A stretch of 64,000 nt of DNA, taken from the IMG/VR virus record IMGVR_UViG_3300009093_000035, positions 62,001 through 126,000 of that record; one strand, written 5' to 3'. Numbering within the stretch: the stretch's first letter is position 1; every line of letters starts with the position of its first letter. The notes beneath the pieces are model-generated. The model made no database searches, had not been told where the DNA came from, and saw nothing but the letters and a program-made list of their open reading frames with translations. Shown here one piece after another: positions 21,106 to 62,551 of the stretch. Position numbers and translations under genes: made by a program.

Positions 21106-21618
21106 TCAGCCCATCTTCTCCAAGTCGTCGATGATCGAACCCAAGGCGTTCATCGCGTAGTGAAGGTGGCCCAGGCTCTTCTTCGCCTCGCCCTTCTTCA
21201 TGATCTTCGCCGCTTCCGACAACGAGGGCGAGATCTTCCTGGAAATCTCATCGATCGCCGCCTTCACCCAAGGGTTCTTCGGCGAAGGAAAGGCCTCGAT
21301 CTCGGCGAACTTCTCGGCCACCCGCTCAGGAGAAGCGCTTCGTGCGTACGGCATACCCTCTTCGTCACCCTTCTCGGATAGGAACTTGTGCCAGGCGGCC
21401 TTCGCTTCCGCTCCGGTCATGAACGTCTTCGTCGAGGGCCAGTAGAGAACGTCATCGCCTCGGGCGAAAGATCGGCCGAGACCGTCCACTCCCGGGTACT
21501 TCGCCTTCATCCAGCGAGGATCGTTCGAAAGAGTACGACCGTACCCGGCCACTCTATCCACCAGCCGTTCGGCCATGGACAGGAAAGCCGGGTCGGACTT
21601 TGACGAGGGGTTCGACAT
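21106..21618 (-). CDS. Hypothetical protein with RVA-type tags
   Basis: Contains LVDRVAGY and RSASPERVAEKF; GGAG upstream. Confidence 0.7.
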   Translation of the reverse strand: MSNPSSKSDPAFLSMAERLVDRVAGYGRTLSNDPRWMKAKYPGVDGLGRSFARGDDVLYWPSTKTFMTGAEAKAAWHKFLSEKGDEEGMPYARSASPERVAEKFAEIEAFPSPKNPWVKAAIDEISRKISPSLSEAAKIMKKGEAKKSLGHLHYAMNALGSIIDDLEKMG

Positions 21619-21619
21619 C

Positions 21620-21943
21620 TCAGCTCTTCAGAGCGATCGTGTCGGCCACGTCGTCGCGGATGTCCTTCATCGTCGAGAGAGTGGCGTCGAGAAGCTTCAC
21701 GGCGGTGAGGAGATCTTCGCCGGAAGACATTCGAGCCTTGCTCAAGATCTTGAAACACTCCCAGACGTTGAGGTTCGCTGCCTTCAGTTCGACGGCGCGT
21801 CCTTCGAGGAAGCGACGCTGGATGAGGGACATTTCGCCCCAATCGACCCGCCCCTCCTTCAGGAGGGGAAGGATCGAAGGACGAAGCTCCGGCTTCGCGT
21901 GAGCGAGACGGATCAGCTTCGAACGAAGGTGACGTTCCTTCAC
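21620..21943 (-). CDS. IRLAH-tag protein (107 aa)
   Basis: N-terminus LRSKLIRLAHAKPELRPSILPLLKEG. Confidence 0.8.
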   Translation of the reverse strand: MKERHLRSKLIRLAHAKPELRPSILPLLKEGRVDWGEMSLIQRRFLEGRAVELKAANLNVWECFKILSKARMSSGEDLLTAVKLLDATLSTMKDIRDDVADTIALKS

Positions 21944-21952
21944 GGGCTCTCC

Positions 21953-24900
21953 TCAGGAGGGGTTCTGGACAGAGACGCGGAACGTCATCTGGATGTAGAG
22001 CAGCGGGAAGACCGGGACGTAGAAGGCGTTCACGAGAACCGCCGTCGGATCTTCCGGGTCGGTCGCCACGGTGATACCCGTGAAGCTCGTGATGATCTGT
22101 TCCTGGACCGCTCGCTTGAACATCTCGGAGAGACGTCCCTCGATCTGGCCGAGGATCTGCGGGAGGAACTTGACACCGATGAACGGGTCGAGTTCCGCTC
22201 GCGCGCGCTTCTGCATGTCGTCGGCGATCTGGATGACCGTCGGGATCCTCGACAGGATGTTCGACATGTCCGACGTGAGGCCGTGTCGGATCCGGAGGAA
22301 GGGAAGACGCTCCTCCAGGACCGTGACGCCGCGCTGAGCGACCTGGTTGGCCTGGACCGCGTCGAGACGCCGCGCGAGAGCCGTGAAGCCCGAGAGCTGG
22401 CGACCCGTCCACGGCGTGGCCGAGTCGATCGAGGGCGAGGTCGTGCTCGCCGCGACCGCAGCCGCGAGGTAGCGACCGTCCGAGAGGTACTGCTTCGAGT
22501 TCCCCAGGGCGTCGGTCAGCGAGAAGGTGACGATGTCCGGGTAGATGAACCGGACGCGGCTCGCGCCGGTCGCCTGAGCGATCGTCCCGGCCTGGATCGG
22601 CTGGGTGCCCGAGGCGTAGCCGAAGATCGCCGTCCGCTCCGCACGGTAGCGGATCGAGGACTGGACGTCGCAGTGGATGGCCGTCTGCTTCGCGAGGTTC
22701 GCCGTCGCCGGGGTGAGGAGGACGATCACGGTCGGGGAGATGTTCCCCGGCAGAGAATCGCCTTCGAGCGCCCGGAGAGCGTCGAGGTACGTCTGCTCGC
22801 TCGCCTGGGACGATCCCGGGGTCTTCTTGACCTGGTAGGTCGCGATCACCGAGGAACCGTTCAGGAACGAGAAGTAGGCCGCGAGGGAGAGCGGGTTGTC
22901 GGGGCTGACGTCACCGTACTCCGCCACGACGTCCGAGAGACGCGAGAAGAACTTCGGGGTGAAGTCCTGCTTCTCGAAGTTGTAGCTGACGTAGTAGACC
23001 GTTCCGATCGAGGGCTCGTCGCCCGTCTTCTTGAAGGTCTCGACGAAGGCCGAGTCGCCCACGACCACGCCGTTCGTGTTCGTGACGATCAGCTCGATAC
23101 CCGGGACCGCGAGGGTCGGGATGTTGCCGTCGGTGGTGAAGGTCTTGCTCGACCGGAAGGTGAGCGTCGCGAGGGCGCCAACCGGGTACGGGATCCCGCC
23201 GTCGCGCGGAAGGATCGTGAAGACCAATCCCGTCACGTCGTCGTAGTAGGTCTGACCCACCACGCCGTCCTGACCGACGCCGTTGTTGAAGACCGAGGTG
23301 TTGGCCGAACCCGAGCCCGAGGTCGGATCCGACGAGGTCACGAAGAACCCGTCGATCGCCGCCTCGCCCGAAGCCCCGTCCGCCGACGTGATCAGGAGCA
23401 TCGTCCCGGTCACGAGAGCGTTGTGGGACGTGGCGTCGGCGAAGTCGATCGAGGAACCGACTCCGAGCGTCTGGCTCTGGAAGTAGAGGTAGACGTTGTT
23501 CGTCGAGTCCTTCTGGATACCGGCGAGAGCGCGGCCCGCGAAGTAGTTCACGTCCGGGGTCGCGAAGGCGGTCATGAAGGTCACGAAGGCGCCAGACGCC
23601 CCCGCGTGGTTCATGAGCACCGAGCCCATCTGGAGCGCCGAGACCGACGTCGGAGCCGCCGAGCTGTCGGGGGTGAACCCGAGGGTGTCGTTCGCGCTTC
23701 CCGATCCGATCACGAGGGTCGAAGCCGGACCGACTCCGCCACCGGTGAGGCGAATCGAAGCGCCTTCCTGAAGGACTCCGACCGTCGCGGAAAGACCCGC
23801 CGCCACGATCGCGGCGTTGATCTGGCCGAGGACCGAGCCCGCGACCGTGACCGGCCCGAGAGCCGTATCCGTCCCGGGACCCGAGGCCGCGAAGACGCAG
23901 GTCACGAGACCGCCGCCCGCCGTGAAGGTCAGGACGTTGTTCGCGGGGTTGCTCGGATCCGACCCGTCGAAGAAGGTGACGTTCGGCTGACCGTCACGGC
24001 TGTCGCCGAACGTCGCCGCAGCGACCTGACCGCCCGACCAGCCCGTGAGGGCGAGAAGGGTGGGGGCCTTCACGTTCGCGCCGTAGGCCGCTTCCGCCGT
24101 GACTCCGTTGAGGAGACCGGACTTCACCGCGCCGGTTCCACCCTGGAGGGTGATTCCGGCCTGGGCGAGAGCGGAGTTGAAGGCGATCGAGTTCCCGCCG
24201 ATGAAGAGGCGGTTCCGGAGGATGATCCGGTCGTAGGGGAGGCGACCTGCCGTCGTCGTCACCGTGTAGCGACGAGCGATCGGGCCGTTGTAGACCTTGA
24301 CCTGGTCGCCGTTCGTCGCAGCGGCCGTCGAGAGACCGGCCAGGATCGCGAAGTCGCGAGCCGGAGTGGCGTTCGTGATGAACTCCAGGTAACCCGCAGC
24401 GTCGGCGCCCGCGAGCGTCGCCCCAGACCACGTCGCACCCGTGACGGTCGTCGTCGTGGTGATCGAGTTCGAGCCGAGGCCCTGGCTCTTCGCCGTGACT
24501 CGCATCGTCGTACCGGGGCCCTGAGCCGCCGAGACGACGGGGTTGAGCGTGGTCGAAGCCGCGTAGGTCGAGCCAGCGCCCGTTCCGAGGTTGATGGCGT
24601 TGATCAGGTTCGTGATCGAGGCCGCCGTCGACCCGCCGATCAGGACGTGTCCGTCCACGTCGGTGAGGACGGTCTGGAAGGTGTAGACCTTTCCGTTGAT
24701 GGTGACGGTCTGGGTATCCGTCGGCTGACCCGTGAAGGTCAGGAGACCCGTCGACCGAGCGATCGTGAGGGTGAACCGGATCTGACCCGAGGCGAGAGCC
24801 GAAGCCGTCACCGACCCGAGGAGACCGCCCGTGGCGTTGATCGTGGCCAGCTGGGTGTTGAGCTGGGCGACGAGAGCGCCTACCGAGGCGTAGGTGCCGG

Positions 24901-27259
24901 GGGTGAGGGTGACCGTCTGGATACCCGACGCGCCGGACACGCTTCCCGTGTAGTGGAGAGAGAGGCGGTCGTACTCGTTCGCCGCGACGGTGTACGCGGT
25001 GAACTGACCCGCTCCGTCGTAGCGGGACTCGTGACCCGCCGTGAGAACCGCCGCGTTGATCGCGGAGACCCAGGTAGCCGCCGTCGCCGATCCGACGGTT
25101 CCCGTCGAGACCGAGACCGGGACGCCGTCCACGACCATGTTGATCGTGTCGTCGACTCCGGAGGTGAGGCCGTAGGTGGTCTCACCCGTCGCCGGGTCGT
25201 ACTTGATCTCTTCGCCGAGAAGCGAGGCGAACGCGCCGGCTCGATTCCCGCCCGTCGGAGACGAGAGGTCGATACCAGCCGCGATACCCGTCTGGGCCGG
25301 AAGCCCGTCGATCGTGAGACGGAGGGCGTCGGAGATGTTGTCGATCGTGTAGTACGGCTGCGGGCCGAGGTTGGTGAACCGGGCCGGGGTCTCGTCGCTT
25401 CGAGCGAACTCGACCGTGACGGTCTCCTCGACGGGGACGCCGCCTTCGATCCGCGCGTCCGGGAAGAACTCCGAACCCGAGGGGAAGTTGATCTGGACCG
25501 TCGTGAGGTCAGAGCCCTTCCCCGTGAGGAACACGTCGAATAGCGAGGCTCCTGACCCGTTCACGAGGGAGTAGGTTCCGATCCCGCCCGCGCCCGCCGT
25601 CACGTTCGTGAGCGTGTAGGCGTGGCTCGAACCGATGTTCGCCTGGTCGACGAGGGTGTTGTAGTAGAAGGTCGCGTAGACCGAGGCGCCTTCCGGCACC
25701 GGGGACTTCAGCGTGATCGAGGAAGTCGTGTCGTCGACCTTCAGGACCGTGACCACCCCGCGAGCGAGAGCGTCCTGGACGCCGAAGCCCCAGTAAGCCT
25801 TGATCAGGTCCGGACGGGTCGTCGCGAGATCCGAACGGCCGTTCGAGACCGTGAGGAAGAGCGACTCACCGAGCGGGTTGCCGCGACCGTTGCCCGTCGT
25901 GGGCTGGAACGGAAGCTGGAAGACCGTCCGACTCTCGACCGCGACCGGGCCGGTGTTGTCCACCGTCGGGGTGCAGGAGGCCATGAAGACCTGGTTGTCG
26001 ACGAGCGTCGCCTGGATCTGGGACGTACCGAGCGTCACTCCGCCTTCGGTGTGGGTCGCGGGGGAAACGAGCGCCGCCGTACCCCAGACGATCACGTCAT
26101 CCTTCAGGACGTACGAGACGCCCTGGACGAAGGTGCCGGCCGTCGACCCGTCGGGGGTGAGACCAACCTGGGTGATCGCCGTGACGCCGATGTTGGCGAG
26201 GTAGTCGAACGTGTCCTGCCAGGTGTTGAAGTAGTAGCGGATCTTCACCGTCGAGGTCTTCGCCGGAGCGAAGGGGAGCGTCACGGCGCGAGCCGTTCCG
26301 TTCACAGCGCTCGGGATGACCTGGACTCCGTCCACCGTGACGACCACGTCCGCCGGGTTCGTCGTCGTGAGACCGCCGCCGTTCCCGTCCACGATCGGGC
26401 CGTTGAACACGTAGAAGGTACGGTTCCGCGACGTCGAGGCGTTCGGCACGAAGCCGAGCGTCGTATTCGCCGTCCCCGTTCCGATCACGATCGACTGGTC
26501 CGCCGAGAGGCGGAGGCAGACCTGACCGAGGTTGTTCACGAAGGTCGAAGCGACCAGCGAGCCGATCCCCGCAGTCCCGTTGATCGTGGCCGCCACGACC
26601 GCCGCCGACACGGACGGGGCCGACGAGGGCATCGTGACCGTGACGAAGGAGAGCCCGTCCACCGAGAAGGTGAACTGGTCGTTCGCGCCGAGGATGAAGG
26701 CGAAGTTCTGGCCGGCCTGGCCATCGATCACGGCCGCGTCCGAGGAGACCTGGTCCGAGACGTCGTCCGTCGTCAGGGTGTCGGTCCGGTCGAAGAAGTA
26801 GGTGCAGCGGACCGAGTCCGTCGGAAGCGGCGCCTCCGCGATCTCGACGATCCCCTTCGCCGCGTCGAGTCCGAGGACCACGACCGGGAAGTTGTTGATC
26901 AGGACCGAGACCGAACTCGTGTCGGTCGCGAGCGTCCCCGTCCCGTCGCCCGAAACGAGCGGAAGGTTGCGGACCTGGAACTTCGTGATCGTCCCGTCGA
27001 AGTCACCGAGGGTGACCAGGCCGCTCGGGGAAACGTTGAGAACCGCCCTTCCCGACTCGTCCTCTTCCGTGACCTGCTGGTCGATCGTCGAGGACGAGCC
27101 TCGGACCACCGGCAAGTTCTGACGAGACAGGATCTCCGTACCCGTTCCGACGAGAACGGTGATACGGGCGGGGACAGGCACCGGTGTGTTCGGGACCCCG
27201 AAGAACGTCTGGGTGTAGACGCCCGGGGGTGCATATCCGCCACGAAGAAGACTCGGCAT
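21953..27259 (-). CDS. Contractile tail sheath protein, unusually large (~1768 aa)
   Basis: N-terminal PPGVYT motif; C-terminal sheath domain (LAAAVAA ... RIRHGLT ... ADDMQKRARAELDPFIG ... VNAFYVPVFPL); long beta-rich insertion; followed by the tube gene. Confidence 0.88.
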   Translation of the reverse strand: MPSLLRGGYAPPGVYTQTFFGVPNTPVPVPARITVLVGTGTEILSRQNLPVVRGSSSTIDQQVTEEDESGRAVLNVSPSGLVTLGDFDGTITKFQVRNLPLVSGDGTGTLATDTSSVSVLINNFPVVVLGLDAAKGIVEIAEAPLPTDSVRCTYFFDRTDTLTTDDVSDQVSSDAAVIDGQAGQNFAFILGANDQFTFSVDGLSFVTVTMPSSAPSVSAAVVAATINGTAGIGSLVASTFVNNLGQVCLRLSADQSIVIGTGTANTTLGFVPNASTSRNRTFYVFNGPIVDGNGGGLTTTNPADVVVTVDGVQVIPSAVNGTARAVTLPFAPAKTSTVKIRYYFNTWQDTFDYLANIGVTAITQVGLTPDGSTAGTFVQGVSYVLKDDVIVWGTAALVSPATHTEGGVTLGTSQIQATLVDNQVFMASCTPTVDNTGPVAVESRTVFQLPFQPTTGNGRGNPLGESLFLTVSNGRSDLATTRPDLIKAYWGFGVQDALARGVVTVLKVDDTTSSITLKSPVPEGASVYATFYYNTLVDQANIGSSHAYTLTNVTAGAGGIGTYSLVNGSGASLFDVFLTGKGSDLTTVQINFPSGSEFFPDARIEGGVPVEETVTVEFARSDETPARFTNLGPQPYYTIDNISDALRLTIDGLPAQTGIAAGIDLSSPTGGNRAGAFASLLGEEIKYDPATGETTYGLTSGVDDTINMVVDGVPVSVSTGTVGSATAATWVSAINAAVLTAGHESRYDGAGQFTAYTVAANEYDRLSLHYTGSVSGASGIQTVTLTPGTYASVGALVAQLNTQLATINATGGLLGSVTASALASGQIRFTLTIARSTGLLTFTGQPTDTQTVTINGKVYTFQTVLTDVDGHVLIGGSTAASITNLINAINLGTGAGSTYAASTTLNPVVSAAQGPGTTMRVTAKSQGLGSNSITTTTTVTGATWSGATLAGADAAGYLEFITNATPARDFAILAGLSTAAATNGDQVKVYNGPIARRYTVTTTAGRLPYDRIILRNRLFIGGNSIAFNSALAQAGITLQGGTGAVKSGLLNGVTAEAAYGANVKAPTLLALTGWSGGQVAAATFGDSRDGQPNVTFFDGSDPSNPANNVLTFTAGGGLVTCVFAASGPGTDTALGPVTVAGSVLGQINAAIVAAGLSATVGVLQEGASIRLTGGGVGPASTLVIGSGSANDTLGFTPDSSAAPTSVSALQMGSVLMNHAGASGAFVTFMTAFATPDVNYFAGRALAGIQKDSTNNVYLYFQSQTLGVGSSIDFADATSHNALVTGTMLLITSADGASGEAAIDGFFVTSSDPTSGSGSANTSVFNNGVGQDGVVGQTYYDDVTGLVFTILPRDGGIPYPVGALATLTFRSSKTFTTDGNIPTLAVPGIELIVTNTNGVVVGDSAFVETFKKTGDEPSIGTVYYVSYNFEKQDFTPKFFSRLSDVVAEYGDVSPDNPLSLAAYFSFLNGSSVIATYQVKKTPGSSQASEQTYLDALRALEGDSLPGNISPTVIVLLTPATANLAKQTAIHCDVQSSIRYRAERTAIFGYASGTQPIQAGTIAQATGASRVRFIYPDIVTFSLTDALGNSKQYLSDGRYLAAAVAASTTSPSIDSATPWTGRQLSGFTALARRLDAVQANQVAQRGVTVLEERLPFLRIRHGLTSDMSNILSRIPTVIQIADDMQKRARAELDPFIGVKFLPQILGQIEGRLSEMFKRAVQEQIITSFTGITVATDPEDPTAVLVNAFYVPVFPLLYIQMTFRVSVQNPS

Positions 27260-38679: not shown

Positions 38680-38682
38680 CGC

Positions 38683-39123: not shown

Positions 39124-39156
39124 GCCTCCGCCGTTTCAAAGAGAATCCACCGAGGG

Positions 39157-39759: not shown

Positions 39760-39793
39760 AGACCTCCGACCTCAAAGGAACTCCACCGAAGGT

Positions 39794-48500: not shown

Positions 48501-48844
48501 TGTCGGCCTATCGCGACCCCCCTGGACGTTCCCCGTGTCCGTACCACTGTCGTCAAATAGCAGCGGCCGGATGGGGTGAGGGATGGACCGGGTTGTGGAA
48601 CTGGGAGTGCGTAATGTGTAAGGCGCGCGCTCCCATGTGGAGGTGGATTCTTCTGCCCTTCCTCCCTACCCTCTCTCACATACCGCTGGGACCCGGTCCC
48701 TACCATGTAGTCGACCCGAGACTGACGGAAGCTGAAGCTCTGAGAGTCGGGTGGACGAAAGAACAGATCCAGAAAGAGCGAAAGACGGGCTTACCGAATC
48801 AGCTCGATCGGTGGAAAGAATGGACCTGGGGAGAGCTTCCTTAG
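48500..48844 (+). CDS. Hypothetical Trp/Cys-rich protein (~114 aa)
   Basis: ATG overlaps the upstream TGA; C-terminal part of ORF 47990..48844. Confidence 0.5.
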   Translation: MSAYRDPPGRSPCPYHCRQIAAAGWGEGWTGLWNWECVMCKARAPMWRWILLPFLPTLSHIPLGPGPYHVVDPRLTEAEALRVGWTKEQIQKERKTGLPNQLDRWKEWTWGELP

Positions 48845-49416
48845 AAGGTCGCCCCGAGCTTCCGTAGGTACGCGAGAAGGCCATCGACCTTCGGATTCGG
48901 TACCTTGCTCTTCTGGATATCGATGAGCTTCCCGATCTGAACCGGGTCCGTCTCCTCGATCGAGATCTCCCCGGTGTCCGAAGCCCGAAGAGTTGCAACG
49001 GGCCTCGGGAGCCTCTCGTTGAAGAACACGAAGAGGAGATCTCCGCCGGCCGGGTCGTGCTTCACGATCACCGGATCTCGGACGTAGAGACCCTTCGCCG
49101 ACCACTGGATGTCGTTCCGAACGTTGGAGATCGCCCGGTAGGCCGGCGACATGAGGAGAGCGAGGTTCGCTTCGAGCTTTGCCTGAAGGAAGTTCGCCGC
49201 TTCGTCGTCTCCGATCTCCCGAAGATGGGGGATCAGGTCGTCCGAAGTGACGAACCCGGTCGAGCGAACCGCCTCGTTGATGCGCTCCTGTAGCTCACCC
49301 GAGAACTCGGCCTTCTTCGAAACCGGCTCCTTCGCTTCCTTCAGGAGCGGTAGGAGGATCGGACGAAGCCCGGGGTTCTCGTGGGCCAGGCGGATCATCT
49401 TCGAACGGAGAGTCAT
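48841..49416 (-). CDS. IRLAH-tag protein, 191 aa
   Basis: MTLRSKMIRLAHENPGLRPILLPLLKEAK. Confidence 0.8.
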   Translation of the reverse strand: MTLRSKMIRLAHENPGLRPILLPLLKEAKEPVSKKAEFSGELQERINEAVRSTGFVTSDDLIPHLREIGDDEAANFLQAKLEANLALLMSPAYRAISNVRNDIQWSAKGLYVRDPVIVKHDPAGGDLLFVFFNERLPRPVATLRASDTGEISIEETDPVQIGKLIDIQKSKVPNPKVDGLLAYLRKLGATF

Positions 49417-49440: not shown

Positions 49441-50502
49441 CTAGCTGCCCAAGGCCTCTTCGAACTTGGAGGACAGGTCCGGGGAGAGCTTCCCGAGGGC
49501 GTAGAGGGCGAACAGTTCCGCGAAGAACTCCTCCACCGTCTTCGAGGAATACGGGGTAGGGAACTTCGCCACTACAGCCCGCTCTTCGAGAATCTTTCGG
49601 ACGGTCCTCTTGACTACGAATCCGCCCCCCGAGAGACCGTACCGGTACCCGTCGTCGGATTCAATTACTGGAGGCGGACCTCGGCGGTTGGAGAGAGGGA
49701 TTGGAAACACATCCCCCACTTTCGGCATCTCTACCTGGACTCCAGAGGATCGCTTCATCAAGTAGTAGAAGCGGTTGAAGGCCTCCAGGACAGGCTTCGG
49801 AGCGAACTTGTACCAGTACCGGTGTCCCAGCTCGTGACACAGGGTGTCGAGGTCGTCGAACCCTCTCTTGGCCATCGATCGGATGTAGACGTCGTCTTCC
49901 GAAAGCGAGTACCAGGCGAGAGTCCGGGCGTTCTTGATTTGACCTACGACGTAGACGTCTCCGTAGAGGACCTTCTTGAAGTCGCGGGTCGCTGAGAGGA
50001 TCCGATTCGCGCTCTCGAAGAGACTCTGGATCTCATTGAACTGATTCGCGTCCGCCCCCACGGTGTTGTGCACCTTGAAGGGTCCGACGGTCGCTTCCTG
50101 AGTTCCGCCGGATACTCGTTCGGGCCAATCCGAAGCCTCCGAAAGGAACTGGAGCCAGGGCTTGTTCTTGTCGTACCAACCGATGACGTCCTTCTGTTGG
50201 CGCTTCGAAGCGAGAAGGGCCCGCGAAGCCAACTCCAAGAACTTCTCTTTCCCAGGAGGGATCTCTCGGGTCTGAAGCAGCCACTCCACTAGCGAACGAC
50301 CCGACACGATCGTGGGGATGTACCCGTACGTGTTCAAGATCAAGCCGTTGGGCTTCGCCCTCCCCCGCTGTTCGGAGACGTTCTCGGCGAGAGAATCGAC
50401 GGACATCCGATAGTCGGACACCAGTTTCGATGGGTTGTCCCACCCCTTCGCTCGAACGTACCGAGACGCCACCCTTACCTCGCTAGGAGCGCGTAGAACC
50501 AC
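49441..50502 (-). CDS. Zincin metallopeptidase-domain protein with N-terminal RVA tag
   Basis: LCHELGHRYW (HExxH) plus downstream EEFFAELFA (third ligand, lethal-factor-like); N-terminal EVRVASRYV. Confidence 0.75.
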   Translation of the reverse strand: MVLRAPSEVRVASRYVRAKGWDNPSKLVSDYRMSVDSLAENVSEQRGRAKPNGLILNTYGYIPTIVSGRSLVEWLLQTREIPPGKEKFLELASRALLASKRQQKDVIGWYDKNKPWLQFLSEASDWPERVSGGTQEATVGPFKVHNTVGADANQFNEIQSLFESANRILSATRDFKKVLYGDVYVVGQIKNARTLAWYSLSEDDVYIRSMAKRGFDDLDTLCHELGHRYWYKFAPKPVLEAFNRFYYLMKRSSGVQVEMPKVGDVFPIPLSNRRGPPPVIESDDGYRYGLSGGGFVVKRTVRKILEERAVVAKFPTPYSSKTVEEFFAELFALYALGKLSPDLSSKFEEALGS

Positions 50503-50531: not shown

Positions 50532-51482
50532 TCAGAGGGCCTTCGAGAAGGTAGAGGAGAAGTCGGAGGCGATCGTTGCGGCTACCGTGGCTACGGCCTT
50601 CTTCGCGGTGAAGACGAGACCCATCTCTCGGTTCGAGGCAAGAGAAGCGTGGGTCAAGTTCTGAGAGCCTACGAACGCAGTCTTCCCGTCTACCACGAAC
50701 GCTTTCGCGTGGATGTAGGGCTTCGTTACGATCCGAACCGGAATCCCGGAAAGCGTCAGTTGATCCGTAGCTGCCTTCCCAGCGGGAGACTCCATCGCAT
50801 CCGACATCACGACGCGAATCGCTACCCCGCGGGCCGCCGCGGACTTCAGGGTCGCGATCGTATTGGCGTCGCTGATCTCCTCGTCCTCCAGATCGATCGT
50901 TTTCTTCGCTCCGGACAGAAGGTCGTGGATGGTCGACTTCGCGTTCAACGGAGAGACCACCAGGGAGCCCGCGTAGGTGGAGATCGGAGTCCCTGCAAAG
51001 TCCCCCTCGAAGACGGCCTCAGCGTCCGCTACGACCTTCGGAAGGGTCGCTACAACCAGGAACTCCCGATTCGACTTCAGCGCCGCCGTAGTGGCGTTCA
51101 TCGTCATGATCCAGGCGGTCTTCCCATCCAGAATCACCGACTTCTGATGGGTGAGAGAGAAGTGGGAAGGGGCCCAGACTACCTTCACCCCAGCAGCTGC
51201 TAGGACGGCGAACTCGTCGTTGTTGTTGTTCGAGAGGCCTGGGTTGAACCTCTGATTGAGGATTACTCGAACGTCGAGCCCGGCCTTCTGGCGATCGATC
51301 AAGGCGTCGATCACGGCCTGAGAAGACAGGAGGTACATCGTCATGTGTACCGAGGTCTTCGCCATCCGAATCGCCTTTACCAGGGCCACGCCAGAGTCCC
51401 CCGGCTCCACTATCACCCGAACGGAACCTCGGGGAATCGAAGCCCTTCGAATCTTCCGGTTTCTGTTCGGGTTGTGGCCCAC
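50532..51482 (-). CDS. Phospholipase D superfamily protein (two HKD motifs)
   Basis: HQKSVILD and HAKAFVVD ... GSQNL ... NREMG. Confidence 0.9.
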   Translation of the reverse strand: MGHNPNRNRKIRRASIPRGSVRVIVEPGDSGVALVKAIRMAKTSVHMTMYLLSSQAVIDALIDRQKAGLDVRVILNQRFNPGLSNNNNDEFAVLAAAGVKVVWAPSHFSLTHQKSVILDGKTAWIMTMNATTAALKSNREFLVVATLPKVVADAEAVFEGDFAGTPISTYAGSLVVSPLNAKSTIHDLLSGAKKTIDLEDEEISDANTIATLKSAAARGVAIRVVMSDAMESPAGKAATDQLTLSGIPVRIVTKPYIHAKAFVVDGKTAFVGSQNLTHASLASNREMGLVFTAKKAVATVAATIASDFSSTFSKAL

Positions 51483-56659: not shown

Positions 56660-56663
56660 TGCC

Positions 56664-58763
56664 CTACACCTTACCGGTCGGCAGCTCCCAGTTCTTCACC
56701 ATGTCGAGAGTCGCTGCGACGTGCTTACAGACCTTGTGGATCGAGGTCGGGTCTTTGATCGAGGGCTTCGAGGCCGTGCCTCTCGGGCTCCCGTACAGGT
56801 AGTTCCCGAACTTCGCCCAGTGTTCCGGTCCCTGCCACTGCCAGAACGGACAGGAGCAAGAGACCTCCAGATCCATCCGCCCGAGCTTCGAGACGTTCTT
56901 CGCGGGCCGCGAGACCTTCATCCGAACCACGTAGGTCTCTTTCGAGGTCGCGCCCGGAACCGAGAACGTGTACATCGCGTTCTTCTGATCGAAGCGCTTC
57001 CCCTTTGGCCTCAGGGTCTTCGCTCGAAGGAGAACGTCAGTCGAAGTCTCCCCGAGAAGCTCAGCGAGACGCTTCGCGACTCTCCAAGCCGAAGCTACTC
57101 GCTGGGAAGAGGCTTCCTTGTTCACGAATCCGTGACCCGAGGGGATCACCTTCGCGGATCCGGGCGTATCCGGCATCTCTCCGCGCTCGCGGTAGACCTC
57201 GATGTCATGGCTCTGGGCCCGATCGCGGTGCTCCTGATCGGGGTAGGGAAGCGACGGGTTGACCGGAGAAGGTTCGCCCAGGTTCTGAGCCCCGGGTCCC
57301 GGGTCCATGTTGTAGCCCGGACGGTAGACCTCTCGGTAGAAGGTCGCGGCTACCGCTCGCGGATCCGGAGACCCGTAAGCCTCCTCCAGCAAGCTGAAGA
57401 AGGTGTCGAGGTCCTCATCGGTTTCGAAGACCATCCCCGAGGTGAAGGCGCGAAGCGGGACGACTTCGCAGTCTTCCGTATCCCCATCGATGTGGACGAG
57501 GAGACCCTCATCCTCGAAGCCGAGGAGATCGCCCCATCCCCACACCTCGTGGTAGAACGAAAGGGGCAAAGAAGACGAAGCCTTCTTGTCCTCTCGCTCC
57601 TTTCGCGAACGTTCAGCGATCGAGCGCGCGCCGCCCGCGGGGAGACGACGAAAGCGGTTGTGGTACTTCGGCATGTTGCGGAGGGACTTCCTCCGCTTGA
57701 ACTCGGGGCTGTTTCGGATCTTCTTGTACCGGCGCTTCGCCTGCATACGGATCCGGTTCTTCCGCCGACGGTAGTTCTTCTGGTAGTAGCGCTTCGCGTA
57801 CGACTTCTGCTTGTGTTGACGGCTGTCGTACGTCGGAAACATCCCCGCGCCCGCGGCCTCGCGGATCGCTTGGAGCATCTCCTCCTCGGACCCTTCTCCC
57901 GTCGCCGTCCGACGTGGATAGACGTTGTCCTTGTAGGGGTGGCCGTACTCTTCGCCGGGAGTCCCAGGCGTTCTCATCTTGAACTGAGACTGGGGGTTCG
58001 GCGAAGCGGGTTGGCCCTTCGTAGCCGGGCCTGGGGTGTTGTAGACGGGAGGACCGTGACGGTGCTCCACCAGGTCCACGTTGTTGTCCGTCGTCTCCGG
58101 AAGGGACCTCTCGCGGTCCGACTTCCAGGTCTCTCCGGGGGCGTGGTAGATCGAATCCCCGAGAGGATCGTTGATCCCCTTCGCGGGCTTCTCGTCTACG
58201 AAGGTACGGACCCCGGCGAGATCAGCCGCTGGAGCTTGGTACCCAGCGCCGCGAATCTGACACCCTCCGGCCGGAGCTTCCGGAGTCTTCCGGTTCTTCC
58301 AGTAGGTGGTGATGAGAGACGGCGTCCCCTTGTGGGACCCGAATCCGAAGACGAAGAACAATCCGGACTTCGGATCGACCCACTCCATCTTCTGACGATC
58401 GGACTGGAGGAGCTGCCGGTAGCGCGGATCTCGCTTCCGCTTCCAGTCCTCGATCTCCGAGACGAAATGGGAAAGCGCCTCGCGAAGATCTCGAATCGTC
58501 ACGGACCGAAGGTCCATCCGATACTGAGAGTGGGGAGTGAGAACGAACTGATTGAAGGGGTGAGGGCCGCGTTCGATCAGCGGGTCGTAGACCTCGTGAG
58601 CCTGCTGGTTCGTGAGGTCCTGGTCTCGATCCACAAGCGACACGAGTTCCTCGGCCTCGCCTGGGGGAAGCTTCTCCTTCAAGATTCGATCTACAACCCG
58701 GCACGGACCTCCGGCGAGTCCGAGCGGAGGTTGAAGATCCGCGTACTTGAAGAGGAGCGCCAT
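56664..58763 (-). CDS. Multidomain protein with C-terminal SWIM zinc finger and RVA tags (699 aa)
   Basis: VSCSCP ... CKHVAA (SWIM); very basic Arg/Lys segment; KEASSQRVASAWRVAKRL. Confidence 0.75.
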   Translation of the reverse strand: MALLFKYADLQPPLGLAGGPCRVVDRILKEKLPPGEAEELVSLVDRDQDLTNQQAHEVYDPLIERGPHPFNQFVLTPHSQYRMDLRSVTIRDLREALSHFVSEIEDWKRKRDPRYRQLLQSDRQKMEWVDPKSGLFFVFGFGSHKGTPSLITTYWKNRKTPEAPAGGCQIRGAGYQAPAADLAGVRTFVDEKPAKGINDPLGDSIYHAPGETWKSDRERSLPETTDNNVDLVEHRHGPPVYNTPGPATKGQPASPNPQSQFKMRTPGTPGEEYGHPYKDNVYPRRTATGEGSEEEMLQAIREAAGAGMFPTYDSRQHKQKSYAKRYYQKNYRRRKNRIRMQAKRRYKKIRNSPEFKRRKSLRNMPKYHNRFRRLPAGGARSIAERSRKEREDKKASSSLPLSFYHEVWGWGDLLGFEDEGLLVHIDGDTEDCEVVPLRAFTSGMVFETDEDLDTFFSLLEEAYGSPDPRAVAATFYREVYRPGYNMDPGPGAQNLGEPSPVNPSLPYPDQEHRDRAQSHDIEVYRERGEMPDTPGSAKVIPSGHGFVNKEASSQRVASAWRVAKRLAELLGETSTDVLLRAKTLRPKGKRFDQKNAMYTFSVPGATSKETYVVRMKVSRPAKNVSKLGRMDLEVSCSCPFWQWQGPEHWAKFGNYLYGSPRGTASKPSIKDPTSIHKVCKHVAATLDMVKNWELPTGKV

Positions 58764-58766
58764 GGC

Positions 58767-59336: not shown

Positions 59337-59338
59337 GA

Positions 59339-60094
59339 CTACACGAGCTTCTTGTGCTTGGGGAGTTCGTCGCGACCTTCCGGTAGACCCTTCGTTCCGG
59401 GCTGCTCGGTCTCGATCACGTACCGGTTGAGGGTCGAGAACTGTCTCCCACCCGGAAGAGTCTCGATCTCGGACGGATCCAGAGGCGCGTTGTTCGCTTC
59501 CGACTTCGCCTCGGATACGGTCCGATCAGCTTCGGAATCCTTCACCGACTTCACCGCGACGCCAGGCTTGTTCGAGACCGCGTTCGATTCGGAGAACTCC
59601 CGAACCTCTCTCATCTCCGGATTCCCGAAGAAGTAGGCCTCAGCCGTCGGGGCCGCCCCGGGAGGGGCCTCCGCCGCCTCTAGGAAGCGCTCCGCGACCC
59701 GATCGGGGCCGGCGGATAGGAACCGGTGGGCGACCCGCTCGGGGGCGGATTCCTTCCCCCGGGAGCCCGCGAAGGGAGCCGTCTTCAAGGATTCGTCCAC
59801 CATCTCTCGGTCGTCCAAGGAAATCCGCCCCCGCAAGAAATCCTCGCCCATGACCGTCATGGCGTAGGACGTCCGGTCGAGAGCCCGCTCGGCCGCGCTC
59901 AGACGCGCCGGGAATCCCTGTAGGATGTCCCCGGCGACCTGGTAGAGATGGTCCCTAGCCTCGGAGTCGTCCACCATCGCCTGGACCCTATCAGCCATGA
60001 GGCGGATCCGGTGGACCTCGATACGCGCAGACGTGATCCCCTCGGCGAGAAGGGACCACGCTACTTGACTGGAGGCGGTCTTGCGTTGACTCAC
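59339..60094 (-). CDS. Protein with tandem RVAxRF tags (251 aa)
   Basis: KTASSQ at the N-terminus; PERVAHRFL and PDRVAERFL. Confidence 0.7.
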   Translation of the reverse strand: MSQRKTASSQVAWSLLAEGITSARIEVHRIRLMADRVQAMVDDSEARDHLYQVAGDILQGFPARLSAAERALDRTSYAMTVMGEDFLRGRISLDDREMVDESLKTAPFAGSRGKESAPERVAHRFLSAGPDRVAERFLEAAEAPPGAAPTAEAYFFGNPEMREVREFSESNAVSNKPGVAVKSVKDSEADRTVSEAKSEANNAPLDPSEIETLPGGRQFSTLNRYVIETEQPGTKGLPEGRDELPKHKKLV

Positions 60095-60142
60095 GGCTTC
60101 ATAAGCCGCCAGCCCATAGCCTTAATCTCGTTGGGACCGAGA

Positions 60143-61294
60143 TCAGGCCGTCGCGGCGGCGACCTTCTGGCGGTGGGCCAGGTTGATCCGCGCGTGCTTC
60201 TGGACGGCCGCCGTTTCGACCGCGAGGACGCGCTCGAAGTGGTCCGGGTTCTTCTCGAAGAGATCGCAGGCGAGCTTCACGCGCTGGAGCCAGTGGATCT
60301 TCATGTCCCACTTCAGCCCGCCGCCGAGATCCATTTCGTCCCCGGCGAGGATCACTTCCTCGATGGTCTGGGGCTTCTTCGGAGCCGGAGAGACCGCCTT
60401 CGTGGCCTTCACTTCCGCCTTCGGGGCCTCCGGTTCTTCCGAAACCTCGGGAGCCTCGATCGGACCTCCGTTCACGGCTTCAGCCGAAGCGGTCGCCTTC
60501 GCTCGACGCTGCTCGGCGATGATGCGAGCGCGATCTTCGGGGTTGAGCGTGTCGATGATGTCCTCGACCTTGTCGGCGCTCGCGGCGTGGATGTCGGAGC
60601 CCTTCTTCGATTCGGTCGAGAGGATCGTCGAGGTCTTCGCGATCGTGGGCTTCTGGATCTCGGGCTTCTTTCGAGGACCCTGGTCCAGACGCGCCGTCTC
60701 TCGGGCCGCCTGGGCGCCGTCGGAGATGATCGTCCGACCCTTCGCCGGAGATCCGATCTTCCCGATCACGGTCGCGTCCTCGTTCCCCGTTGCGTCCGAT
60801 TGGACTTCCATGACGCGCTTCGTCGAGGGACCGACCGATCGCTCTTCCTGGTCCTGGTTGTGGACGGTGCGGCTGAAGGTCGCCGTCTTCGCCAGGGCCT
60901 CGGAAACGTTCGCCGAGGCTGCTGCCGCTTCCTTCCCTTTCCGCGTCGCCGGACCCATGTCCTTCTCGTCGTCGGTGACGGTCGTGGGGGAGATCCGAGC
61001 GGCCTTCCCCTTGTCCTGAGCCGAACGAACCTTCACGTCCGCCGCCCGAGGCGTGTACGTAGAGGTAGTGTCCCCCGACGGAACGAGCCACCCCACCCTC
61101 ACGCCTCCGCGTAGCTCGGGGTAGTTGTGGTCCGCGCCGCCCAGCCTGAGGGTGGTCCCGTCGAACTGGATGACGTCGCCCGGGCGAATGTCCGTGCTCA
61201 GCTTCCCGAGGTGGACCTTCACGGTGGCGCGGAAGGAGTAGAACTCCCCTGTGGTGTACTGAATTTCTACGGACGCTGGAACGGTCGAGGTCAT
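60143..61294 (-). CDS. Hypothetical protein, charged/low-complexity core (~383 aa)
   Basis: Start at 61294 after GGAGGA; small globular ends joined by a K/E/A/T-rich linker. Confidence 0.65.
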   Translation of the reverse strand: MTSTVPASVEIQYTTGEFYSFRATVKVHLGKLSTDIRPGDVIQFDGTTLRLGGADHNYPELRGGVRVGWLVPSGDTTSTYTPRAADVKVRSAQDKGKAARISPTTVTDDEKDMGPATRKGKEAAAASANVSEALAKTATFSRTVHNQDQEERSVGPSTKRVMEVQSDATGNEDATVIGKIGSPAKGRTIISDGAQAARETARLDQGPRKKPEIQKPTIAKTSTILSTESKKGSDIHAASADKVEDIIDTLNPEDRARIIAEQRRAKATASAEAVNGGPIEAPEVSEEPEAPKAEVKATKAVSPAPKKPQTIEEVILAGDEMDLGGGLKWDMKIHWLQRVKLACDLFEKNPDHFERVLAVETAAVQKHARINLAHRQKVAAATA

Positions 61295-61342
61295 GAGACA
61301 GAGTCCTCCAAGCGGGACTCTACCGAGCATCCAATGTCTTGA

Positions 61343-62551
61343 TCAGCCGGGGAGATACTCCGCGGCGATGGACACCACTTCCTTCTTGCTGAGGCCGCTC
61401 GGACCGATGAGATCGGCCACCTCGCCGTCGTAGAGAACGGACATGGCGAGATCGTGGGCGACACTCTCGATCCCCTCGCCGGAATCCCCCGGGTCCCAAT
61501 CAGACCGAGCGTCCTTTGCCCAGGCCTGAATCGCCTTGAAGAGTTTCGACTTCGCCGCCGACTGGCTGAGAGGACGCTGGAGAGCACTCGGATCTACGAC
61601 TCCCTTCGGAGCCTTCTTGATCGCGCCCCTCTTCAGGAGGTCTCGGATGAACTCGTTCGGAAGACTCTTCTTCTGCCAGGACTGCTGATCCGGATTCAGC
61701 ACCTCGGCCATGAAGGCGTCTCTCTTCACCTTCGGCATCCCCGCCGCGATCAGACCCCCGACGATGTCCTGAGCGAGGCCCACGTAGGCGTTCAGGTTGT
61801 CCCCGTAGATACGAACCTCGGTTCGAGGGTACGCTGCGAAGCGCTCGACCACGCGGGCCGGGCTCGCGGTCTTCTTCAGGTAGATCTTGTCTTCGAGCGT
61901 TCCGAACCCCGTAGCCCCCGTGTACCACCCGTTCGGAAGGCGCGCAGAGGTGATTCCCGGAACCGGCGGTTCGGGAGTCACGTAGATGTAGTCGGCCGTG
62001 AGCTTCGTGACGATCAACCCCTGGCCGGCCTGGAAGCCTCCCCGAGAGAGCTTCACCGGTTCCGTCACTGTGAGACGGTCATTGACCGCGAGCTTCGGCG
62101 GAAGGGTGTACCCCTCTTCCTTCATCTTGAAGTAGCGCGGGTACGCCTGACGGACGGTTCGCTCGTTCGAAGCAATCATCGAGTCCGAGTAGGTCTTCCC
62201 GAAGAGAAGCGGATACCACTCTGGGTGCTCGAAGAAGGGGATCGAGGCCGCCTCGTCCTCCTCGAACCAGACGTATCCGCCGGCCTTCTCTCCGATTCGG
62301 TAGGCCGGAGCCGAAAGGACCTTCCGAGCCACGCCGTCCGAGATCCCCATCCCCCCGTGGCTCGCAGTCGAGACCCAACTCACCCCTCGAAGCGAAGGAT
62401 GGTCGTACATCGTCTGGACCGTTCCCCACGGAGACTTCGGAGCCTTCGGATCGTTGTAGCTCCAGTTGCGAGTACGGGGAGAAGCCTTCTTGTCCATGAC
62501 GCCCGGCTCCTTGTCCCAGTTCGCGAGTTCTTCGTAGGTAGCGATGCTCAT
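61343..62551 (-). CDS. Multidomain protein with N-terminal DUF7007-like domain and RVV/RF tag (~402 aa)
   Basis: SPWGTVQ ... VSTASHGG ... WFEEDE pattern; KKASP and KKTASPARVVERF separate the domains. Confidence 0.7.
   Translation of the reverse strand: MSIATYEELANWDKEPGVMDKKASPRTRNWSYNDPKAPKSPWGTVQTMYDHPSLRGVSWVSTASHGGMGISDGVARKVLSAPAYRIGEKAGGYVWFEEDEAASIPFFEHPEWYPLLFGKTYSDSMIASNERTVRQAYPRYFKMKEEGYTLPPKLAVNDRLTVTEPVKLSRGGFQAGQGLIVTKLTADYIYVTPEPPVPGITSARLPNGWYTGATGFGTLEDKIYLKKTASPARVVERFAAYPRTEVRIYGDNLNAYVGLAQDIVGGLIAAGMPKVKRDAFMAEVLNPDQQSWQKKSLPNEFIRDLLKRGAIKKAPKGVVDPSALQRPLSQSAAKSKLFKAIQAWAKDARSDWDPGDSGEGIESVAHDLAMSVLYDGEVADLIGPSGLSKKEVVSIAAEYLPG

What the first reader, a model, noticed from the sequence alone, without database searches (positions are those of the whole stretch)
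21106..62551. Second short tag, (S/A)-x-x-R-V-A-x-R-F/Y, in five other proteins
Seen directly: SPERVAEKF (21106..21618), EVRVASRY (zincin, 49441..50502), SSQRVASAW/RVAKRL (SWIM protein), PERVAHRF and PDRVAERF (59339..60094), SPARVVERF (61343..62551). None of these proteins carries the IRLAH tag, and several copies lie just after KxAS/RSAS. Inference: a second amphipathic docking helix marks a different cargo class or the same pathway.
Basis: partly seen in the sequence, partly recalled or inferred. Interest (0 to 1): 0.7.

Follow-up and report, generated by a model that had tools for sequence, protein, structure and literature searches.

The report
Cleavable cargo tag in jumbo phages
A 12-residue peptide motif (basic-x-Ala-Ser, then Arg-Val-Ala-x-Arg-Tyr/Phe-Leu/Met) recurs at the ends and domain junctions of enzymes in a large clade of uncultivated jumbo phages, and most likely serves as a removable address label that loads these enzymes into the phage head.

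Summary
RVAxR[FY] occurs 7 times in the 248-kb record, against 0.11 expected, with varied codons. A scoring matrix trained only on relatives recovers the window's copies. The motif recurs in four related jumbo-phage genomes with 38-64% GC, often at the same place in orthologs. It is absent from an unrelated 58%-GC jumbo phage. So it is not a composition artefact. Copies lie at extreme N-termini, extreme C-termini or between domains of proteins carrying domains typical of virion-packaged effectors (InPase, HAD+TopoIB, C39 peptidase, ART-PolyVal). They also occur in head-module proteins between the portal and protease genes. The upstream "KxAS" is a separate and stronger signal: RxAS is the most over-represented of 7668 a-x-b-c patterns. 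It clusters at conserved positions in the scaffold and in the prohead protease, which has the herpesvirus-assemblin/T4 gp21 fold. My best reading (confidence 0.5) is an amphipathic docking helix plus an adjacent Ala|Ser cleavage site. That resembles a T4 capsid-targeting sequence or a herpesvirus scaffold tail, but it works at either end or internally. The receptor is unknown, because the one complex prediction gave no answer. Zero overlap with IRLAH is uninformative (0.4 expected), and the two tags swap at one orthologous junction.

The parts
21106..21618 (-). 170-aa protein next to the giant tail-sheath gene. It has a conserved N-terminal domain, then the tag, then a variable C-terminal part.
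   Evidence: Orthologs in G001 and G002 are conserved up to ...NPYARSAS, keep the tag (RVVATF, RVASKY), and then diverge or end.
21304..21345 (-). RVA tag copy ARSASPERVAEKFA (aa 92-105), with RSAS immediately upstream.
49441..50502 (-). 353-aa HExxH (zincin-like by motif only) protein with an N-terminal tag.
   Evidence: The GTG start has an AAGGAG ribosome-binding site. Pfam finds no family.
50455..50496 (-). RVA tag copy LRAPSEVRVASRYV (aa 3-16).
   Evidence: (score 16.4, 0.03 expected per proteome).
56664..58763 (-). 699-aa multidomain protein with a C-terminal CxC...CxH (SWIM-like) module. The tag lies directly in front of that module.
   Evidence: The G001 and G002 orthologs keep ...NKEAS..RVAKRLAE.
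57063..57122 (-). Tandem RVA tag copies NKEASSQRVASAW and RVAKRLA (aa 548-567), preceded by KEAS.
59339..60094 (-). 251-aa protein with a helical N-terminal domain followed by a long region of low conservation that holds two tags.
   Evidence: Orthologs in G001 to G003 keep RVARRY, RVARRF and RVAKM at the same place.
59681..59758 (-). Two RVA tag copies, GKESAPERVAHRFL and SAGPDRVAERFL (aa 113-138).
   Evidence: (top score, 26.8).
61343..62551 (-). DUF7007-domain protein (402 aa from the ATG at 62551; an alternative start lies at 62581). The tag sits between DUF7007 and a C-terminal domain.
   Evidence: (PF22653, E 1.2e-14). Similarity to the G001 ortholog ends at the tag.
61835..61876 (-). 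RVA tag copy KKTASPARVVERFA, preceded by KTAS.

Best explanation
The motif is a short linear peptide of about 12 residues with consensus [KR]-x-[AS]-S-x(0-2)-R-V-A-x-R-[YF]-[LM]. It is specific to a large clade of uncultivated jumbo myophages. I read it as a cleavable head-targeting tag made of two parts.

1. The RVAxRY(L/M) part folds as a short amphipathic helix. It docks the tagged protein onto a component of the assembling prohead (scaffold core, capsid protein or portal; which one is unknown), so the protein is enclosed in the head.
2. The adjacent [KR]-x-A-S is then cut by the phage's assemblin-fold prohead protease, probably between Ala and Ser as in herpesviruses. This frees the cargo from its anchor.

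The cargo proteins are enzymes of the kind other phages deliver with their DNA: TopoIB/HAD, InPase, peptidases, ADP-ribosyltransferase and a poly(A) polymerase-family (PolyA_pol) nucleotidyltransferase.

Shown: the motif is real, it is selected at the protein level, it is conserved across the clade, its positions are known, the domain families of its carriers are known, [KR]xAS is enriched and sits in the scaffold and protease, and the protease has the assemblin fold.

Inferred: docking, packaging, cleavage at [KR]xAS, and the scissile bond.
For: (1) The motif is real and not compositional.
- 7 copies against 0.11 expected, none in the off-frames, and varied codons.
- It is enriched in relatives with 38%, 45%, 56% and 64% GC.
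- There are 35 non-redundant strict copies across relatives.
- A matrix trained on relatives recovers the copies in this record.
- An unrelated jumbo phage, RSL1 (58% GC), has none.

(2) It behaves as a short linear motif.
- 9 of 26 strict copies lie within 12 residues of a protein end, against 9% expected.
- The others sit exactly where similarity between orthologs stops.
- Flanking sequence varies while the core is kept.
- Conserved positions 0, 1, 2, 4, 5 and 6 with variable 3 and 7 fit a helix buried on most faces.
- AlphaFold2 draws the copy in the g148428 family as a short helix within a low-confidence linker.

(3) The carriers fit the cargo idea.
- This record: InPase (PF18823), HAD_SAK_1+TopoIB, Peptidase_C39 and DUF7007.
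- Relative G003: ART-PolyVal, a lone HAD_SAK_1 and PolyA_pol.
- InPase and ART-PolyVal were defined on 'polyvalent' proteins predicted to be packaged in virions (PMC5512222).
- The TopoIB protein and other tagged genes lie between the portal and protease genes.

(4) There is evidence for a cleavage module.
- RxAS ranks 1st and KxAS 4th of 7668 patterns over five genomes, and only K/R, A and S are enriched at their positions.
- Both are absent as an excess in RSL1.
- The top holders in every genome are the scaffold and protease orthologs.
- The sites sit at conserved positions in variable or disordered stretches.
- The protease model matches herpesvirus assemblins (Z up to 11.1) and T4 gp21 (Z 9.9). 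Assemblins cut at Ala|Ser, with the M-site just before the capsid-binding tail (PMC4498786).
- 36% of tags have [KR]x[AS][SA] within 9 residues upstream, against 2.5% baseline.
- By my count from the sequences printed, 9 of 11 C-terminal tags have it directly adjacent.

(5) The same grammar appears elsewhere in the head module.
- The scaffold ends with [KR]xAS followed by LSKLWESAPDVSKVFG.
- The g149033 family ends with [KR]xAS followed by xFGLFxxK.
Against: - No proteomic, structural or genetic data exist for any member of this clade.
- The only complex prediction (tag with capsid protein, protease domain and scaffold core) scored 0.31 against a mark of 0.32. It counts neither for nor against binding.
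- AlphaFold2 does not pack the motif confidently against any domain.
- N-terminal copies often lack a clean [KR]xAS on their cargo side.
- Internal copies would stay attached to the downstream domain after cleavage, so for them 'release' is only partial.
- About 46% of strict copies read RVA[SA], which itself fits [KR]xA[SA]. The helix and the protease site are therefore not cleanly separable.
- The [KR]xAS statistics are inflated by paralogous tag families, for example about 23 MRRSAS N-termini in G003.
- The record is probably only about half of the genome: CheckV estimates 56% completeness, and identical capsid protein and g83106 sequences are on record from a 472,929-bp contig.
Confidence: 0.5

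Rival explanations
1. RVAxRY(L/M) is itself an extended, high-affinity recognition or cleavage site, with R-V-A at P3-P1 and S/A-R-Y-L at P1'-P4'. The enzyme would be the prohead protease, or the phage's own C39-like or HExxH peptidases. Its job would be to cut fused multidomain proteins at their junctions, with no docking role.
For: - 16 of 35 strict copies have S or A after RVA, so they match [KR]xA[SA].
- RVAS occurs at the conserved N-terminal site of the protease and near the scaffold C-terminus.
- Tags lie at domain junctions.
- Polyvalent proteins are proposed to be processed by their own peptidase domains (PMC5512222).
Against: - More than half of the copies have E, H, Q, R, G, L and other residues after RVA, whereas the genome-wide excess is strict for Ser (KxAS 246 against 132; KxAT 98 against 103).
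- The conserved scaffold and protease sites lack R-[YF]-[LM] downstream.
- Many copies lie 2-8 residues from the C-terminus or 5-6 residues from the N-terminus, where cutting would achieve nothing.
- The spacing of conserved positions fits a helix, not an extended strand.
Confidence: 0.2
2. The helix docks to something other than the prohead. Candidates are a host hub protein, a phage replication or transcription compartment, or another tagged protein through oligomerisation. The nearby [KR]xAS would then be unrelated or regulatory, for example a basophilic Ser phosphorylation site.
For: - The receptor is unidentified.
- Some carriers (PolyA_pol, TopoIB, HAD) could equally act inside an infected cell.
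- R-x-x-S resembles basophilic kinase sites (my own knowledge).
Against: - Tagged genes sit inside the head module.
- [KR]xAS concentrates in the scaffold and the protease.
- The carrier domain families (InPase, ART-PolyVal) are ones predicted to be virion-packaged.
- The same 'site plus tail' grammar ends the scaffold itself.
Confidence: 0.13
3. The motif is a neutral 'seam' left by repeated gene fusion, fission and module shuffling among paralogous leader or trailer sequences. It is kept by descent and has no binding function of its own.
For: - Tags mark the points where orthologs stop being similar, and where fusions differ between genomes. Examples are HAD alone against HAD+TopoIB, a 202-aa g148428 against 1000-aa fusions, and the RVA/IRLAH swap.
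Against: - The six core positions are kept across genomes whose GC ranges from 38% to 64%, while the neighbouring residues are free.
- In the g148428 family, R, V and A are kept in 105, 105 and 84 of 112 homologs.
- Synonymous codons vary.
- Such purifying selection on a seam needs a function.
Confidence: 0.1
4. The motif is a chance or compositional artefact of an Arg/Val/Ala-rich, GC-biased proteome.
For: The record has 61% GC, and R, V and A are common.
Against: - Shuffles, off-frame translations and permuted motifs all fail to reproduce it.
- It recurs in 38% and 45% GC relatives.
- It is absent from RSL1, which has 58% GC.
Confidence: 0.02

Closest known systems
Capsid targeting sequences (CTS) of phage T4 internal proteins and Alt, and the longer propeptides of phiKZ/SPN3US-type giant phages
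   Same: These are short peptides that direct otherwise unrelated proteins, including an injected ADP-ribosyltransferase, into the prohead. The prohead protease then removes them at its consensus site. Paralogs share the tag while the rest of the protein diverges (PMC5694885).
   Different: - The T4 CTS is strictly N-terminal and 10-20 residues long, and it ends in L/I-x-E. phiKZ and SPN3US use S/A/G-x-E or A-x-E sites.
- Here the tag works at the N-terminus, the C-terminus or internally.
- It has a different sequence.
- The putative site is [KR]-x-A-S.
- Several tag classes coexist: RVA, IRLAH, and MRRSAS...RIARLE in relatives.
- Function here is inferred only.
Herpesvirus scaffold C-terminal tail with maturational (M) site, cut by assemblin
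   Same: - The protease has the assemblin fold.
- There is an Ala-Ser motif immediately upstream of a short C-terminal peptide. In herpesviruses that peptide binds the major capsid protein and is cut off to release the scaffold (PMC4498786).
- The scaffold of this clade ends in exactly this arrangement, and C-terminal RVA tags copy it.
   Different: - The herpesvirus P3 residue is hydrophobic (V/L/I-x-A|S), whereas here it is Lys or Arg.
- Herpesviruses use the device on scaffold and protease only, not on a panel of enzymes.
- Binding of the RVA helix to the capsid protein is untested.
Encapsulin cargo-loading peptides
   Same: These are short terminal peptides that load diverse enzymes into an HK97-fold shell. 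They occur at either terminus and are modular.
   Different: - Encapsulin peptides have other consensus sequences and are not removed by a protease.
- Encapsulins have no scaffold, portal or DNA.
- No sequence similarity to them was found here.
Polyvalent proteins and MuF/portal-fused effectors of phages (Iyer et al. 2017)
   Same: The domain repertoire overlaps (InPase, ART-PolyVal, HExxH peptidase, papain-like/C39 peptidase, HAD). The genes are encoded next to portal or head genes. Packaging and injection are predicted.
   Different: - Those proteins are proposed to reach the head by fusion to MuF or portal domains, or as giant fusions.
- This record has no MuF domain.
- The effectors here are mostly separate one- to three-domain proteins that share a short peptide instead.

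Membership tests
T4-type capsid targeting sequence | N-terminal propeptide of 10-20 residues | tested here: not met
   Copies are N-terminal, C-terminal or internal. Only some are N-terminal: the HExxH protein here, and the ART and HAD proteins in G003.
T4-type capsid targeting sequence | Removed by the prohead protease at its consensus site next to the tag | tested here: inconclusive
   [KR]x[AS][SA] lies within 9 residues upstream of 36% of tags, against 2.5% baseline. That this is the protease site is inferred. No cleavage data exist.
T4-type capsid targeting sequence | Necessary and sufficient to bring a protein into the prohead | not testable with these tools
   This needs reporter fusions or virion proteomics. 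The complex prediction gave no answer.
Herpesvirus-type 'M-site plus capsid-binding tail' | Protease with the assemblin fold | tested here: met
   The AlphaFold2 model of the protease domain aligns to VZV, PRV, HSV, EBV, HCMV and KSHV proteases (Z 7.0-11.1) and to T4 gp21 (Z 9.9). These fill the top 36 rows. The Foldseek E-values alone were weak.
Herpesvirus-type 'M-site plus capsid-binding tail' | Ala|Ser scissile motif directly upstream of a short C-terminal tail | tested here: met
   This is met as a sequence pattern only. Examples are the scaffold C-terminus and, by my count from the sequences printed, 9 of 11 C-terminal RVA tags. Cleavage itself was not tested.
Herpesvirus-type 'M-site plus capsid-binding tail' | The tail binds the major capsid protein | tested here: inconclusive
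   Complex prediction scored 0.31, below the 0.32 mark, and the controls were not run.
Encapsulin cargo-loading peptide | Terminal peptide that binds an HK97-fold shell protein and is not processed | not tested
   No sequence comparison with encapsulin peptides was run. The differences rest on my own knowledge of their consensus. The association here with a putative protease site and the internal copies would also be atypical.
Polyvalent / MuF-linked packaged effectors | Effector domains from the polyvalent repertoire | tested here: met
   PF18823 InPase, PF18760 ART-PolyVal, PF10307 HAD_SAK_1 and Peptidase_C39 (PMC5512222).
Polyvalent / MuF-linked packaged effectors | Fusion to a MuF or portal domain, or 2-15 domains in one polypeptide | tested here: not met
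   PF04233 is not found in the record. Carriers here have one to three domains, although relatives have 2163-2808-aa portal-adjacent fusions.

The most novel reading that the evidence does not exclude
A widespread clade of jumbo phages (more than 2000 capsid-protein clusters in metagenomes) would programme the protein content of its capsid with a modular peptide grammar. The grammar has several classes of short docking helix: RVAxRY, IRLAH, and MRRSAS...RIARLE in relatives. Each can be placed at either end of a protein or between domains, and each is paired with a herpesvirus-like [KR]-x-Ala|Ser scissile site read by an assemblin-fold protease. Dozens of enzymes could then be loaded, released and injected, and new cargo could be recruited simply by acquiring a 12-residue tag.
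Probability: 0.4. Interest if true: 0.8.

Novelty: new variant of a known kind. Interest (0 to 1): 0.62.

Why it matters
How giant phages choose which of their many proteins go into the head and on into the host is largely unknown outside T4 and the phiKZ group. If this reading is right, it has four consequences.

- A defined 12-residue tag that works at any position, paired with a defined cleavage motif, would allow sequence-based prediction of the packaged and injected proteome for thousands of uncultivated jumbo-phage genomes.
- It would point to the early host-takeover enzymes: topoisomerase IB, ADP-ribosyltransferase, pyrophosphatase and peptidases.
- It would give a portable handle for loading foreign proteins into large capsids, as the T4 targeting sequence did.
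- The Ala-Ser site together with an assemblin-fold protease would add a concrete functional parallel between tailed-phage and herpesvirus capsid maturation.

Tried and rejected
- **DNA-level element** (promoter or repeat) behind the peptide: rejected, because codons differ between copies.
- **Composition artefact:** rejected.
- **The search for related loci with single tagged proteins:** found nothing useful. I reached the relatives through the portal protein instead and fetched whole records.
- **PHROG scan of ten large window proteins:** only a photolyase and one family of unknown function matched.
- **PDB sequence searches** with the protease and g148428: no hits.
- **Complex prediction** of a natural C-terminal tag against capsid protein, protease domain and scaffold core: no answer.
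- **Does the SH3-like domain of g148428 bind its own RVA helix in cis?** AlphaFold2 gives two well-folded domains but a low-confidence linker and helix (pLDDT 53-68, pTM 0.43), so there is no support.
- **Capsid protein N-terminal KTAS as a cleavage site:** not conserved (KTPQ and KTAA in relatives; the family consensus is KTAA), so it is not claimed.
- **Are [KR]xAS sites denser in RVA-tagged proteins away from the tag?** No.
- **Wide homolog search for the 170-aa tagged protein:** only 5 relatives were found. The distant ones carry a different basic motif instead of the tag.


Full report
**What the window is.** The window is bases 62001-126000 of a single 248,579-bp record with about 61% GC. 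Nearly all genes are on the minus strand. ORF 21953..27259 encodes a 1768-aa tail sheath. Its nearest record in the phage collection is an uncultured 485-kb phage (60% identity), followed by the acidobacterial jumbo phage Tunturi 5 (33%). I made my own gene calls (297 genes). Outside the window the head module runs in this order:
- large terminase, 155946-157793
- portal, 153492-155273
- a 154-aa protein
- a 1078-aa HAD+TopoIB protein
- two 202-aa proteins
- prohead protease, 146982-148427
- an acidic scaffold-like protein, 145459-146985
- HK97-type capsid protein, 143445-144323

The capsid protein has more than 2000 homologous clusters in metagenomes, on contigs up to 527 kb. An identical capsid protein sequence is on record from a 472,929-bp contig, and CheckV rates this record 56% complete. 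'Genome-wide' below therefore means about half a genome.

**The observation.** All seven quoted copies are present at the stated places.
- RVA.R[FY] occurs 7 times in the called proteome against 0.11 in shuffles. No shuffle out of 1000 reaches 7.
- It occurs 0 times in the five non-coding frames.
- It is the only one of 240 permutations of the same letters with more than 2 hits.
- The codons for R, V and A differ from copy to copy, so this is not a DNA repeat or promoter read through.
- The copy in the HExxH protein is inside the protein. The GTG at 50502 has an AAGGAG ribosome-binding site, and the G002 ortholog begins MSSAYFVATRFL.
- Six more carriers lie outside the window: a 515-aa InPase-domain protein with the tag at its C-terminus; the 1078-aa HAD+TopoIB protein with two strict copies and one degenerate copy; a Peptidase_C39 protein; a 696-aa protein with the tag 20 residues from its end; and 518-aa and 187-aa proteins.

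**Relatives.** The portal protein retrieved 25 related IMG/VR loci. I fetched five whole related records: G001 at 56% GC, G002 at 64%, G003 at 45%, G004 at 38% and G005 at 68%.
- The motif is enriched in G001 to G004, for example 6 copies against 0.13 expected in G003. It is not enriched in G005, the most distant relative.
- Pooling everything gives 35 non-redundant strict copies. Their flanks add information: Ala at -2, Ser or Ala at -3, a basic residue at -4 to -6, and Leu or Met at +6.
- A matrix built only from relatives finds 8 sites in this record at 0.03 or fewer expected per proteome.
- An unrelated jumbo phage with similar GC, RSL1, has no copy in 100 kb.

**Anatomy.** Copies occur in three kinds of position.
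- At extreme N-termini: MMKPYQRVANRYM, MRNLVARVATKYM and MKPYQRVALRYA in G003, and the HExxH protein in this window.
- At extreme C-termini: ...RVVSRYLR*, ...RVAARFERNLY*, ...RVASRYMSLAH*, ...RVAAKYLGRSL*, ...RVASRFMETKKSL*.
- Between domains.

Of 26 strict copies in called proteins, 9 lie within 12 residues of an end, where a uniform spread predicts 9%. Alignments of orthologs show the tag exactly where similarity ends. In the 170-aa, DUF7007 and C39 proteins, the N-terminal domain is conserved, then comes the tag, and then the sequences diverge or stop. The conserved positions 0, 1, 2, 4, 5 and 6, with free positions 3 and 7, fit a helix with V/A/Y/L on one face and an Arg pair beside it. 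S-P-E and A-P-E in front are typical helix caps. AlphaFold2 draws the copy in the g148428 family as a short helix inside a low-confidence linker.

**Who carries it.**
- In this record: InPase, HAD_SAK_1+TopoIB, Peptidase_C39, DUF7007, an HExxH protein and a CxC..CxH protein.
- In G003: an ART-PolyVal ADP-ribosyltransferase, a stand-alone HAD_SAK_1 and a PolyA_pol enzyme.
- InPase and ART-PolyVal were defined on phage 'polyvalent' proteins predicted to be packaged and injected (PMC5512222). T4's packaged Alt is an ADP-ribosyltransferase with a cleavable targeting peptide (PMC5694885).
- In relatives the portal-adjacent gene is a 1240-2808-aa fusion that holds a TopoIB domain and several tags.
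- The small protein just upstream of the protease has an SH3-like domain, then a linker, then RVAxA[FYH]V, then a zinc ribbon, and a [KR]xAS precedes the RVA helix in about a fifth of its homologs. It keeps R, V and A in 105, 105 and 84 of 112 homologs.

**The KxAS part is a signal of its own.**
- Over five genomes, RxAS is the most over-represented of 7668 a-x-b-c patterns (282 against 128). KxAS is fourth (246 against 132). Only K/R, A and S are enriched at their positions.
- RSL1 shows no excess.
- In every genome the richest proteins include the scaffold and protease orthologs.
- In ten scaffold orthologs at 36-75% identity, the Ala and Ser of one site are invariant, and every ortholog has Lys or Arg at -3.
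- In 70 proteases at 40-63% identity, an N-terminal R-x-A-[SA] is kept (R in 54, A in 40, S or A in 46). It lies in a stretch that AlphaFold2 leaves disordered. 31 of the 70 have a second site just after the catalytic domain.
- The protease model aligns best to herpesvirus assemblins (Z up to 11.1) and to T4 gp21 (Z 9.9).
- Assemblins cut at Ala|Ser, and their M-site lies just upstream of the scaffold tail that binds the capsid protein (PMC4498786).
- The scaffold of this clade ends with [KR]xAS followed by a conserved LSKLWESAPDVSKVFG. A second acidic head protein ends with [KR]xAS followed by xFGLFxxK.

I therefore infer that [KR]-x-A-S is the maturation cleavage site. Three caveats apply: paralogous tag families inflate the counts, no cleavage has been observed, and a basophilic phosphorylation site cannot be excluded.

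**Link between the two parts.** 36% of strict tags have [KR]x[AS][SA] within nine residues upstream, against 2.5% for arginines in general. By my count from the sequences printed, 9 of 11 C-terminal tags have it directly adjacent. Away from the tag, tagged proteins are not richer in sites than other proteins.

**Mechanism proposed.** The helix docks the protein to the assembling prohead, and the protease then cuts at the adjacent site and detaches the cargo. This is the logic of the T4 capsid-targeting sequence and of the herpesvirus scaffold tail, applied to a panel of enzymes and usable at either end of a protein or at a junction.

The receptor is unknown.
- One complex prediction (capsid protein, protease domain and scaffold core against a natural 28-residue C-terminal tag) scored 0.31 against a mark of 0.32. 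It must not be counted either way.
- The scaffold core helix (KAAKCIRIAxxxLG[KR]xAS) resembles the tags, which makes co-assembly with the scaffold a lead.

The main rival is that RVA[S/A]RY is an extended protease site, since about 46% of copies have S or A after RVA. Three things argue against it: the varied residues at that position, the absence of RY(L/M) at the scaffold and protease sites, and the copies that sit only a few residues from a protein end.

**Relation to IRLAH.**
- IRLAH (LRSxxIRLAHxxPELRxxLLPLL) is in 11 proteins here and in G001, G002 and the 485-kb phage, but not in G003 to G005.
- G003 and G004 instead have about 25 and about 15 proteins starting MRRSAS-E(I/V)IRNLEMR(I/V)ARLE-RQAS, a helix bracketed by two [KR]xAS sites.
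- Zero overlap between the RVA and IRLAH sets is expected by chance (0.4 expected).
- At one orthologous junction the two tags replace each other.

They look like classes of one system rather than markers of exclusive cargo pools.

**Verdict.** The function is inferred from context and from analogy. I class it as a new variant of a known kind, the cleavable capsid-targeting peptide.

Noticed in passing
whole record and relatives; e.g. window 21334-21345 (RSAS), 57111-57122 (KEAS): [KR]-x-A-S is enriched across the clade. RxAS ranks first of 7668 a-x-b-c patterns over five genomes. The sites concentrate at conserved positions in the scaffold and prohead protease orthologs, and an unrelated jumbo phage shows no excess. 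This is probably the maturation protease site (Ala|Ser, as in herpesviruses).
   Followed up: yes
window 21620-21943, 38200-40492, 48841-49416, 62554-63807 and seven more outside (genome coordinates): The IRLAH tag (LRSxxIRLAHxxPELRxxLLPLL) is present in 11 proteins, mostly at the N-terminus. It is shared with G001, G002 and LR745208.1 but not with G003 to G005. The 395-aa protein at window 60143-61330 ends with an IRLAH-like ...HARINLAHRQKVAAATA.
   Followed up: partly
relatives G003 (L071-L089) and G004 (L055-L070): About 25 proteins in G003 and about 15 in G004 begin with MRRSAS-E(I/V)IRNLEMR(I/V)ARLE-RQAS. This is a coiled-coil-like helix bracketed by two [KR]xAS sites, and it is probably the counterpart of IRLAH.
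   Followed up: partly
L012:5462-6985 (scaffold) and L012:9036-9641 (202-aa acidic protein): Other conserved C-terminal peptides follow a [KR]xAS site. The scaffold ends LSKLWESAPDVSKVFG in all six genomes. The 202-aa protein family ends xFGLFxxK.
   Followed up: partly
L008:2442-13553 (genome 188.4-199.6 kb): There is an array of 44 tRNA genes plus a tmRNA gene (tag peptide ANDSSYDQLAQAA). My gene caller left this stretch empty.
   Followed up: partly
whole record: The record is probably a fragment. CheckV rates it 56% complete. Sequences identical to its capsid protein and to the 170-aa tagged protein are on record from a 472,929-bp contig.
   Followed up: no
proteins P0122-P0270; G003 and G004 terminase, G005 protease: Many protease homologs are 900-1850 aa long and match in 2-5 separate stretches. 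Some terminase genes in relatives are 1040-1361 aa. These may be inteins or fusions.
   Followed up: no
proteins P0393-P0396: Distant homologs of the N-domain of the 170-aa tagged protein carry a repeated basic motif (NPRRKRTSRNP) at their ends and junctions instead of the RVA tag. This may be another lineage's junction signal.
   Followed up: no
L012:3448-4323 (capsid protein residues 180-187): The capsid protein itself contains LRVARVYM (L, R, V, A, R invariant; V and M at 90% or more; Y not listed as conserved), one residue out of register with the tag consensus RVAxRYM. This may be coincidence.
   Followed up: no
window 21953-27259; 33202-34683; 43540-44658; 50532-51410: The window holds an unusually long tail sheath (1768 aa), a DNA photolyase (phrog_9252, E 7e-195), an RNA ligase (PF09414) and a PLD-like protein (PF13091).
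   Followed up: partly
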